A stretch of DNA of 63,988 nt, filler included, from Octopus bimaculoides (taxonomy: Eukaryota): assembly GCF_001194135.2 (NCBI RefSeq). It is 9 parts of 8 records of this genome, joined end to end, with 100 filler letters (N's around TTAATTAATTAA, not from the genome) between each part and the next. Parts side by side here need not be neighbours in the genome. Positions count along the whole stretch, not along the records: positions 37,034 to 48,850 come from NC_068999.1; 8 more parts are not named here. One strand, 5' to 3'. Under the pieces are notes generated by a model, which worked only from the letters and a program-made list of their open reading frames with translations, did no database searches and was not told the origin of the DNA. Position 1 is the stretch's first letter. Each line of letters starts with the position of its first letter. The position numbers and the translations under genes are program-made. Positions 45,457-45,585 of the stretch are shown here, in pieces.

Positions 45457-45585
45457 AATCTTACAACTGTTTCGGCCTAGTTTTAGCAAGCCCCATTCTA
45501 TCCGAATATTCCTTTCCGGAGTGATTATCGGATGACATTTTGAAATGGGGTAACATGCCCGAACCTCTAGGCCTCTTCAGAGATT
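45457..45585 (-). ncRNA. Type I hammerhead ribozyme with long (100 nt) stem II
   Basis: Minus strand reads AAUCU-CUGAAGA-GGCCUAG-(86 nt)-CUAGGCC-GAAA-CAGUUGU-A/AGAUU. It has a 5-bp stem I, an intact CUGANGA/GAAA core, a 7-bp stem II base, stem III ACA-GU-UGU and a GUA cleavage triplet. Confidence 0.85.

What the first reader, a model, noticed from the sequence alone, without database searches (positions are those of the whole stretch)
45457..45585. Apparently intact hammerhead ribozyme with a 100-nt structured stem II
Seen: every core element is canonical on the minus strand (stem I AAUCU/AGAUU, CUGAAGA, G10.1-C11.1 in the 7-bp GGCCUAG/CUAGGCC helix, GAAA, GUA triplet). Predicted cleavage is between 45462 and 45461. 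The 86-nt loop II folds further (GGCA/UGCU, CCCCAUU/AAUGGGG, AUCCGA/UCGGAU, UCC-GGAAA-GGA), giving one long imperfect hairpin. Stem III (ACAGUUGU) has only a 2-nt loop but is self-complementary with two G-U pairs, so it could pair as a dimer. Established: Penelope-type and retrozyme hammerheads often have such weak palindromic stem III but usually a short stem II. Inference: this may be an undescribed cephalopod retrozyme/pLTR family whose ribozyme carries a large structured insert. It lies antisense to CCDC39 and ~0.8 kb upstream, in the same sense, of the candidate exon at 44432-44642.
Basis: partly seen in the sequence, partly recalled or inferred. Interest (0 to 1): 0.85.

Follow-up and report, generated by a model that had tools for sequence, protein, structure and literature searches.

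The report
Lone hammerhead ribozyme motif, oversized stem II
The minus strand really carries a sequence-perfect type I hammerhead self-cleaving ribozyme motif, of the kind borne by animal mobile elements, with an 86-nt insertion where loop 2 should be. It is a single copy with no detectable relatives, so it is most likely a stray mobile-element remnant and not a new ribozyme family.

Summary
The motif is at the stated coordinates. All conserved core nucleotides are canonical. Helix I is 5 bp and helix II 7 bp, all Watson-Crick. Helix III is an 8-nt self-complementary block, and cleavage is predicted between 45462 and 45461. It is the only canonical-core hit in the piece. Chance expectation is about 6e-5 per piece with a loose descriptor. 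Adding G10.1-C11.1 and the 8-nt palindromic helix III, both part of the published consensus, gives about 0.01 per 2.7-Gb genome.

Rfam Hammerhead_1 aligns full length to exactly this stretch but scores 16.5 bits against a gathering score of 34, with an 87-nt loop-2 insertion in its alignment. The insert alone folds no better than shuffles (z = -0.9). With genomic flanks the active fold is outcompeted, and the monomeric helix III is never populated.

I found no second copy, no tandem repeat, no reverse transcriptase or endonuclease, and no homologue in any reachable collection. The locus lies antisense, about 7.8 kb downstream of a CCDC39-like exon.

Best reading: a solitary type I hammerhead derived from a retrozyme or Penelope-like element, with a loop-2 insertion and probably little activity here. 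The idea of a new family with a structured insert is untested. Interest is low to moderate.

The parts
45581..45585 (-). Helix I, 5' strand (AAUCU, positions 2.5-2.1)
   Evidence: Read directly. Pairs with 45461-45457. My descriptor gives helix I = 5 bp, all Watson-Crick.
45574..45580 (-). Catalytic core, first box: C3 U4 G5 A6 A7 G8 A9 (CUGAAGA)
   Evidence: Exact match to CUGANGA. Aligned to the core of Rfam Hammerhead_1.
45567..45573 (-). Helix II, 5' strand (GGCCUAG; G10.1 is first)
   Evidence: Seven Watson-Crick pairs with 45480-45474. Pair probability is 0.7-1.0 in the isolated 129-mer and at most 0.1 with 50 nt or more of flank.
45481..45566 (-). 86-nt insertion in place of loop 2. It folds as an imperfect hairpin: GGCA/UGCU, CCCCAUU(U)/AAUGGGG, AUCCGA/UCGGAU, UCC-GGAAA-GGA.
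   Evidence: Seen in the MFE folds. Not more stable than shuffles (z = -0.94). Rfam's alignment opens an 87-nt insertion in loop 2. It holds 4 of the 5 CpGs of the element.
45474..45480 (-). Helix II, 3' strand (CUAGGCC; C11.1 is last)
45470..45473 (-). Catalytic core, second box: G12 A13 A14 A15.1 (GAAA)
45463..45470 (-). Helix III block ACAGUUGU (A15.1...U16.1). As a monomer it gives 2 bp (A-U, C-G) plus an AGUU tetraloop. As a dimer it gives an 8-bp duplex with two central G.U pairs.
   Evidence: Read directly. The duplex is -3.4 kcal/mol (8-mer) or -5.4 with neighbouring bases. The monomer helix III has pair probability 0.0 in every context. The Rfam consensus helix III has the same loop-less 4+4 format.
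45462..45462 (-). A17, the cleavage-site nucleotide of the GUA triplet. The scissile bond is 45462|45461.
   Evidence: Index arithmetic.
45457..45461 (-). Helix I, 3' strand (AGAUU, positions 1.1-1.5)
45614..45620 (-). Upstream CCUCUUC tract. It can pair with G5-G10.2 (GAAGAGG, 45578-45572) and so trap the core in an inactive fold.
   Evidence: Unconstrained MFE with 60-100 nt of flank. Loss of helix I and II pair probability with flanks.

Best explanation
This is a solitary, sequence-intact type I hammerhead ribozyme motif of the animal mobile-element kind (non-LTR retrozymes and Penelope-like-element pLTRs). The usual short loop 2 is replaced by an 86-nt insertion that extends helix II. It lies on the strand opposite a CCDC39-like gene, most likely inside one of its introns.

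Shown: the complete canonical core, the three helices in type I order, and the cleavage-site position.

Inferred mechanism: in a minus-strand transcript, helices I and II would dock around the core. The 2'-OH of A17 (45462) would attack its 3' phosphate, leaving a 2',3'-cyclic phosphate on 45462 and a 5'-OH on 45461.

Helix III is only 2 bp plus a tetraloop, or an 8-nt quasi-palindrome. Efficient cleavage would therefore need a second copy to build an intermolecular helix III, as in newt, axolotl and Penelope-like-element hammerheads. No second copy is present in the assembled sequence.

The insertion removes the loop that normally contacts loop 1, and flanking sequence competes for the core. 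I therefore expect weak or no self-cleavage at this locus. I read it as a young or otherwise well-preserved stray copy of a ribozyme-bearing retroelement, with no shown host function.
For: - All 13 conserved core positions, G10.1-C11.1 and A15.1-U16.1 are canonical.
- It is the only canonical-core hit in the piece.
- Chance expectation is about 6e-5 per piece (loose) and about 0.008 per 2.7-Gb genome. The second figure adds the features that are part of the published and Rfam consensus: G10.1-C11.1 and an 8-nt self-complementary helix III.
- Rfam Hammerhead_1 is the best of 4227 families and aligns over model positions 1-45/45 on 45458-45584 (-). The only large departure is an 87-nt insertion in loop 2.
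- Helix I of 5 bp and helix II of 7 bp fall in the ranges reported for Penelope-like-element minimal hammerheads (4-5 bp and 7-8 bp; PMC4209133). Helix III of 2 bp plus a tetraloop is described as the invertebrate type (PMC7229834).
Their pLTRs are reported always to carry hammerheads (PMC6765202).
- CpG observed/expected is 0.83 in the 129 nt against 0.25 in the flanks and the whole piece.
- An intact set of about 37 constrained positions would survive a Jukes-Cantor distance of 0.2 with P of about 8e-4. Both this and the CpG excess point to a young or constrained segment, not old neutral intron.
Against: - No homologue, second copy or covariation is available.
- The Rfam score of 16.5 bits is far below the gathering score of 34. 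Its E-value of 0.15 holds only for a 143-nt search. Nothing passes the gathering score in the piece, and no hammerhead family was reported in a 451-nt search.
- No tandem repeat and no significant flanking direct repeat were found.
- No RT or GIY-YIG remnant was found.
- Loose hammerhead descriptors that allow a 120-nt loop 2 give about 20-30 chance hits per 2.7-Gb genome.
- The active fold is 5-10 kcal/mol above the MFE in context, with helix I and II probabilities of at most 0.1.
- The extra unpaired nucleotide between A9 and G10.1, typical of Penelope-like-element minimal hammerheads, is absent.
- The CpG excess stops at the borders of the motif, which is odd for a larger element of uniform age.
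Confidence: 0.55

Rival explanations
1. This is a member of an undescribed retrozyme or pLTR family whose hammerhead carries a large helix II domain as a family-level and possibly functional feature.
For: - The helix II extension starts with a clean 7-bp helix followed by an internal loop, at the position where Penelope-like-element minimal hammerheads have loop 2.
- Four CpGs are retained inside the insert, two of them facing each other in the AUCCGA/UCGGAU helix.
- The flanking assembly gaps of 141 and 460 nt could hide further copies.
Against: - The insert is no more stable than shuffled sequence (z = -0.94).
- No tandem periodicity below about 450 nt was found in the island.
- No second copy was found in 11.8 kb.
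- No relatives were found in any searchable collection. None of those collections is expected to hold this animal's genome, so this absence is weak evidence.
Confidence: 0.2
2. This is a chance match. An AT-rich intron happens to contain CUGANGA and GAAA flanked by complementary runs.
For: - The hammerhead consensus is small. Perreault et al. (PMC3088659) warn that consensus matches arise by chance in large databases.
- With loop 2 allowed up to about 120 nt, random sequence gives about 20-30 hits per 2.7-Gb genome at helix I >=5 and helix II >=7.
- Most chance hits have long loops, as this one does: 30 of the 34 chance hits with helix I + helix II >=12 bp.
- A relaxed descriptor produces an obvious A/T-run artefact at 39719-39805.
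- The Rfam score is sub-threshold.
- The insert structure and the flanking repeats are within chance.
Against: - All 12 helix I and II pairs are Watson-Crick, helix II starts with G-C, and helix III is the canonical 8-nt self-complementary block. The joint expectation is about 0.008 per genome, or 2e-4 with all pairs Watson-Crick.
- The independent-base model ignores the four-fold CpG depletion, which makes CCGAAA rarer still.
- The CpG excess in the segment is not expected of random old intron (P of about 0.02).
Confidence: 0.15
3. This is a host-exapted ribozyme or structured non-coding RNA that acts in an antisense transcript of the CCDC39 locus. The comparison is with the intronic HH9/HH10 or the discontinuous CLEC2 hammerheads of vertebrates.
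For: The core and helices are intact and CpG is retained. An ORF lies 0.8 kb downstream on the same strand.
Against: - That ORF has no homologue and no domain.
- The motif is antisense to the only supported gene.
- The active fold is disfavoured in context.
- No conservation data are available.
Confidence: 0.05

Closest known systems
Canonical metazoan type I hammerheads of non-LTR retrozymes and satellite repeats: newt satellite 2, Schistosoma Sm-alpha, coral, mussel and axolotl retrozymes (Rfam RF00163)
   Same: - Type I topology and identical core.
- G10.1-C11.1.
- Helix III as a very short stem with a palindromic loop, equivalent to an 8-nt self-complementary block.
- Low-GC context.
- RF00163 aligns full length.
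   Different: - Loop 2 (about 6 nt, with helix II about 4 bp) is replaced by a 7-bp helix plus 86 nt.
- Helix I is 5 bp, not 6, with no recognisable loop 1.
- H17 is A.
- It is not in a 150-450-bp tandem repeat.
- The score is below Rfam's gathering threshold.
Minimal hammerheads of Penelope-like elements (Cervera & de la Pena 2014, PMC4209133)
   Same: [quoted passage not shown]
- G10.1-C11.1.
- Palindromic 15.2-16.2.
- Mostly found as single dispersed motifs, and expected to work as dimers with low activity.
   Different: - No unpaired nucleotide between A9 and G10.1.
- Loop 2 is 86 nt, not a few nucleotides.
- No pLTR or RT-EN context is detectable.
- The helix III palindrome needs two G.U pairs.
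Discontinuous hammerhead in mammalian CLEC2 3' UTRs and the intronic HH9/HH10 (from my own knowledge; Martick et al. 2008 and De la Pena & Garcia-Robles 2010 are cited in PMC4209133)
   Same: A canonical core with a long non-ribozyme sequence inserted into one of the helices, located in a genic region.
   Different: In those cases the long insertion is in helix I. They lie in the sense strand of the host transcript and are conserved across species. Here the insertion is in helix II, the motif is antisense, and conservation is unknown.
Engineered aptazymes, which are hammerheads with an aptamer grafted onto stem II (from my own knowledge)
   Same: A folded domain closes helix II, and the core tolerates distal extension of this helix.
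   Different: Aptazymes are artificial. Nothing here indicates ligand binding, and the insert is not unusually stable.

Membership tests
Hammerhead ribozyme, type I (Rfam RF00163) | Conserved core: C3 U4 G5 A6 N7 G8 A9, G12 A13 A14, A15.1-U16.1, H17 | tested here: met
   CUGAAGA ... GAAA ... U-A(17) read directly and matched exactly.
Hammerhead ribozyme, type I (Rfam RF00163) | Three helices around the core, with helix I open (5'-I-core-II-II'-GAAA-III-III'-H-I'-3') | tested here: met
   Helix I is 5 bp and helix II 7 bp, all Watson-Crick. Helix III is 2 bp plus a tetraloop, or an 8-nt quasi-palindrome.
Hammerhead ribozyme, type I (Rfam RF00163) | Covariance-model score at or above the curated gathering score | tested here: not met
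   16.5 bits against 34. There is no hit at the gathering score in the piece. The alignment is full length, with an 87-nt insertion in loop 2.
Hammerhead ribozyme, type I (Rfam RF00163) | Loop 1-loop 2 tertiary contact that gives fast cleavage at physiological Mg2+ | tested here: inconclusive
   Loop 2 is replaced by an internal loop plus a long hairpin. No defined loop 1 lies beyond the 5-bp helix I. The 3D contact cannot be assessed with these tools.
Hammerhead ribozyme, type I (Rfam RF00163) | Helices supported by compensatory changes among homologues | not testable with these tools
   No homologue was found in the piece or in any collection.
Hammerhead ribozyme, type I (Rfam RF00163) | Site-specific Mg2+-dependent self-cleavage | not testable with these tools
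   This needs an experiment. Thermodynamic prediction is unfavourable in context.
Metazoan non-LTR retrozyme | Head-to-tail tandem repeats of about 150-450 bp, each with a type I hammerhead | tested here: not met
   There is no internal repeat in the 495-nt island and no second hammerhead in 11.8 kb. Gaps of 141 and 460 nt flank the island.
Metazoan non-LTR retrozyme | Low GC (<45%) | tested here: met
   The island is 38.8% GC and the motif 43.4%.
Metazoan non-LTR retrozyme | Expression as linear and circular RNA of monomer size | not testable with these tools
   No transcript data are available.
Penelope-like element pLTR hammerhead (min-HHR) | Location in a terminal repeat next to an RT + GIY-YIG ORF | tested here: not met
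   No RT or EN match was found. All open frames of the piece were listed, and ten of them around the motif were scanned against Pfam. A 5'-truncated solo pLTR cannot be excluded.
Penelope-like element pLTR hammerhead (min-HHR) | Helix II 7-8 bp, helix I 4-5 bp, G10.1-C11.1, palindromic 15.2-16.2 and loop 3 | tested here: met
   7 bp, 5 bp, G-C, and CAGUUG self-complementary with two G.U pairs. The criteria come from PMC4209133.
Penelope-like element pLTR hammerhead (min-HHR) | Unpaired nucleotide between A9 and G10.1 | tested here: not met
   A9 is followed directly by the paired G10.1. A scan allowing the bulge gave no better solution.
Host-exapted intronic or UTR hammerhead (HH9/HH10/CLEC2 type) | Sense orientation in a host transcript and conservation at the orthologous site | tested here: not met
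   The motif is antisense to the CCDC39-like exon. Orthologous loci could not be obtained.

The most novel reading that the evidence does not exclude
The 86-nt domain is a conserved, family-level replacement of loop 2 in an undescribed invertebrate retrozyme or Penelope-like-element lineage. It would act as a regulatory or protein- or ligand-binding module that gates self-cleavage, a natural counterpart of engineered stem II aptazymes. Further copies would be hidden in the assembly gaps or elsewhere in the genome.
Probability: 0.07. Interest if true: 0.7.

Novelty: new variant of a known kind. Interest (0 to 1): 0.3.

Why it matters
Type I hammerheads are common in animal genomes, from thousands to more than 100,000 copies, and are now tied to retrozymes and Penelope-like elements. 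One more copy is ordinary. The unusual point is a fully intact core combined with an 86-nt substitution of loop 2, the element that normally gives fast cleavage through its contact with loop 1.

If this were a family trait, it would show that natural hammerheads tolerate or exploit large helix II domains. It would also explain why covariance models miss such copies: 16.5 bits here. If it is private to this copy, it is a crippled relic. In that case it is useful mainly as a caution that descriptor and Rfam scans under-count variant hammerheads.

Tried and rejected
1. Rfam at the gathering threshold on the whole piece gave nothing. A 451-nt E-value scan gave only chance hits, sR48 and Plastid-ndhJ. 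Hammerhead_1 surfaced, sub-threshold, only in a 143-nt scan.
2. Searches for homologues all returned 0. They covered two metagenome scans, three viral scans and two prokaryote-genome scans.
3. A six-frame translation of the motif against 5.8 billion proteins gave no hit at E <= 10.
4. Exact-product look-ups of two window ORFs found nothing on record.
5. Orthologous loci via the gene: the 77-aa ORF and the CCDC39-like exon found nothing in the word-indexed protein search. The exhaustive representative search found only 50-60% identical CCDC39 fragments, so no related genomic DNA could be fetched.
6. Target-site duplication or partial tandem: short direct repeats flank the motif (GGTTTACATA / AGAGGTACAAA). 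However, the best local alignment of the two flanks is matched or beaten by 66% of shuffles under one scoring scheme and by 39% under a more permissive one. Rejected.
7. 'Structured insert': rejected as a statistical claim.
8. tRNA or SINE head: ARAGORN found nothing.
9. Other RNA families in the insert: only a chance-level Pox_AX hit.
10. Reading the CTAG or TA at the insert borders as a transposon target duplication: the insert ends show no terminal inverted repeats. This was left as speculation (note).
11. A relaxed min-HHR or U3-A8 descriptor yielded only an A/T-run artefact at 39719-39805.
12. Lunse et al. 2017 (PMC5785218) and the supplements of PMC8557442 are not held.

Full report
**What is there.** The piece is 37034-48850: 9182 called bases, 33% GC, with six internal runs of N. 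The finding lies in a 495-nt island (45286-45780) between two assembly gaps. Read on the minus strand the sequence is:

5'-AAUCU CUGAAGA GGCCUAG [86 nt] CUAGGCC GAAA CAGUUGU A AGAUU-3'

- helix I: 45585-45581 with 45461-45457
- core box 1: 45580-45574
- helix II: 45573-45567 with 45480-45474, starting with G10.1-C11.1
- GAAA: 45473-45470
- helix III block ACAGUUGU: 45470-45463
- A17 at 45462, so the scissile bond is 45462|45461.

An independent descriptor scan found this and nothing else in the piece. Exact-pattern searches gave the same coordinates.

**Is it more than chance?**
- In 40 Mb of first-order Markov sequence, 62 hits passed a minimal descriptor (helices I and II of at least 3 bp). 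One hit reached 12 combined helix I and II pairs.
- In 2.85 Gb of random sequence of the same composition, 16 hits had helix I >=5 and helix II >=7 bp. Only 4 of the 34 hits with >=12 combined helix I + II pairs had a short loop 2.
- An analytic calculation reproduces this within a factor of two. It gives 6e-5 expected per piece and about 19 per 2.7-Gb genome for the loose descriptor.
- Adding G10.1-C11.1 and the 8-nt self-complementary helix III gives 3e-8 per piece and about 0.008 per genome.
- Those two extra features were not chosen after the fact. Cervera and de la Pena list them as marks of genuine motifs, and the Rfam type I consensus shows helix III as a loop-less 4+4 block.
- The independent-base model is conservative, because CpG is four-fold depleted here and the motif needs CCGAAA.

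So the motif is well beyond chance for this piece. It is unlikely, though not impossible, as a chance event in a very large scan.

**What the covariance models say.**
- At gathering thresholds nothing in the piece matches any of 4227 families.
- A 451-nt permissive scan missed it as well.
- A 143-nt scan returned Hammerhead_1 (RF00163) as the best family on 45458-45584 (-), over model positions 1-45 of 45. The score was 16.5 bits against a gathering score of 34, and E = 0.15 for that small search.
- The alignment is colinear through helix I, the core, helix II, GAAA and helix III, and opens one 87-nt insertion in loop 2.
- In structural terms the sequence is therefore a canonical animal type I hammerhead with a loop-2 insertion. 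It fails curated membership because of that insertion, a 5-bp rather than 6-bp helix I, and A at positions 7 and 17.

**The insert.**
- The named inner helices appear in the MFE fold.
- The 86 nt on their own fold at -21.3 kcal/mol against -18.4 +/- 3.0 for shuffles (z = -0.94; 17% of shuffles are as good).
- The better z-scores of the 100-nt domain (-2.6) and the 129-mer (-2.1) come from the 7-bp closing helix.
- The phrase 'structured stem II' therefore describes a plausible fold. It is not evidence of selection.
- No tRNA and no credible RNA family lies in the insert.

**Would it work?**
- The active secondary structure costs -31.5 against -36.3 kcal/mol for the free 129-mer.
- The deficit grows to 5-10 kcal/mol with flanks, because two competing helices form: UGAAUCUCUG with UAGAGGUUCG, and upstream CCUCUUC (45620-45614) with GAAGAGG of the core.
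- Pair probabilities of helices I and II fall from 0.7-1.0 to at most 0.1 with 50 nt or more of flank. The monomeric helix III is never populated.
- The intermolecular helix III is worth only -3.4 to -5.4 kcal/mol. It would therefore need a partner in cis.
- Published work on like motifs shows poor cleavage by single copies with such a weak helix III and better cleavage as dimers. Penelope-like-element minimal hammerheads have low activity even as dimers.
- I therefore expect little or no self-cleavage from this solitary copy.

**Context.**
- No second or degenerate copy was found. There is no tandem period below about 450 nt and no significant flanking duplication.
- No reverse transcriptase or GIY-YIG remnant was found among ten open frames around the motif scanned against Pfam.
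- An AG/GT-bounded exon at 37515-37655 (+) weakly matches Pfam CCDC39, at E = 0.009 and profile positions 607-650 of 925.
- Its 22 relatives at E <= 0.001 in an exhaustive search include bona fide CCDC39 proteins, for example a frog XP_069812055.1.
- The protein continues beyond this exon. The motif, 7.8 kb downstream on the other strand, is therefore probably intronic and antisense.
- The minus-strand ORF at 44432-44665 has no homologue and no domain.
- The animal could not be identified. The nearest CCDC39 matches are 50-60% identical.

**Age signal.**
- The 129 nt hold 5 CpGs, with observed/expected 0.83, against 0.24-0.25 in both flanks and the whole piece. P is about 0.02.
- About 37 constrained positions are all intact. 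Such a set would survive a Jukes-Cantor distance of 0.2 with P of about 8e-4.
- If the source is an octopus, which I could not verify, that distance is the one given for the main Penelope-like-element expansion in Octopus vulgaris.
- Both signals point to a young or constrained segment. It is odd that the CpG excess ends at the borders of the motif.

**Comparison with the known.**
- The literature held here places animal type I hammerheads in non-LTR retrozymes and Penelope-like-element pLTRs.
- It reports Penelope-like elements as abundant in octopus genomes.
- It describes most Penelope-like-element hammerheads as dispersed single motifs from truncated insertions.
- The motif has helix I and II lengths in the ranges reported for Penelope-like-element minimal hammerheads and the helix III format of canonical invertebrate motifs. 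It lacks the A9/G10.1 bulge, the tandem context and the element ORF.
- None of the papers I found in the held library describes a hammerhead in cephalopods.

**Verdict.** The best single reading is a solitary copy derived from a mobile element, with a loop-2 insertion and doubtful activity (0.55). Every attempt to reach related sequences failed. The decisive test is a search of the source genome, which these tools cannot perform.

Noticed in passing
window 37515-37655 (+): An AG/GT-bounded 47-codon exon encoding a coiled-coil segment. It weakly matches Pfam CCDC39 (E = 0.009, profile positions 607-650 of 925). It is 50-60% identical to CCDC39 proteins and fragments in the exhaustive search, and no close orthologue is in the word-indexed protein collection.
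   Followed up: yes
window 40151-40346 (+): Three head-to-tail units of 65-66 nt (TTTTTATGTGCCACCGGCACAAGGACCAGTCAGGCAGTTCTGGCAATGACCATGCTCAAAAGGTG), 69-75% identical to the first. Each contains short internal palindromes (GCCACCGGCAC). The nature of the repeat is unknown.
   Followed up: no
window 46505-46721 and 48220-48465 (+): A dispersed direct repeat with blocks of 22-48 nt at 88-100% identity, spaced about 1.72-1.75 kb apart. It is probably two copies of an interspersed element.
   Followed up: no
window 38971-39079 and 48057-48165: An inverted pair of 109 nt at 73% complementarity. Their translations are also alike, which suggests two diverged copies of one interspersed repeat in opposite orientation.
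   Followed up: no
window 43413-43544 (+): An imperfect trinucleotide tract (GAT/GGT/GTG units, period 9-15). In one frame it reads as an acidic and glycine-rich run (DEDEYDDIDDGGGCDDDDGGG...). No evidence that it is coding.
   Followed up: no
It has no homologue in 5.8 billion proteins, no Pfam family, and no exact product on record.
   Followed up: yes
window 39719-39805 (-): A relaxed hammerhead descriptor (U3-A8 core variant, helix III >=1 bp) fires on an A-run/T-run stretch (TTGAAAA...GAAAAA...TTTTTTTTT). This is a low-complexity artefact. It shows how easily loose descriptors give false positives in this AT-rich sequence.
   Followed up: yes
window 45145-45285 and 45781-46240 (gaps) with 44990-45144 and 46241-46400: The island holding the motif is separated by assembly gaps from (CT)n/(TG)n and (TA)n/(TG)n microsatellites on either side. 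Penelope-like elements are reported to prefer microsatellite targets (PMC8557442). However, most of the assembly gaps in this piece abut microsatellites, so no inference was drawn.
   Followed up: partly
window 45474-45480 and 45567-45573 (-): Helix II reads GGC-CUAG ... CUAG-GCC. If CTAG (or TA) were a duplication made by the insertion event, the ancestral helix II would be GGC/GCC closed by a CUAG tetraloop. The insert ends show no terminal inverted repeats, so this remains speculation.
   Followed up: partly
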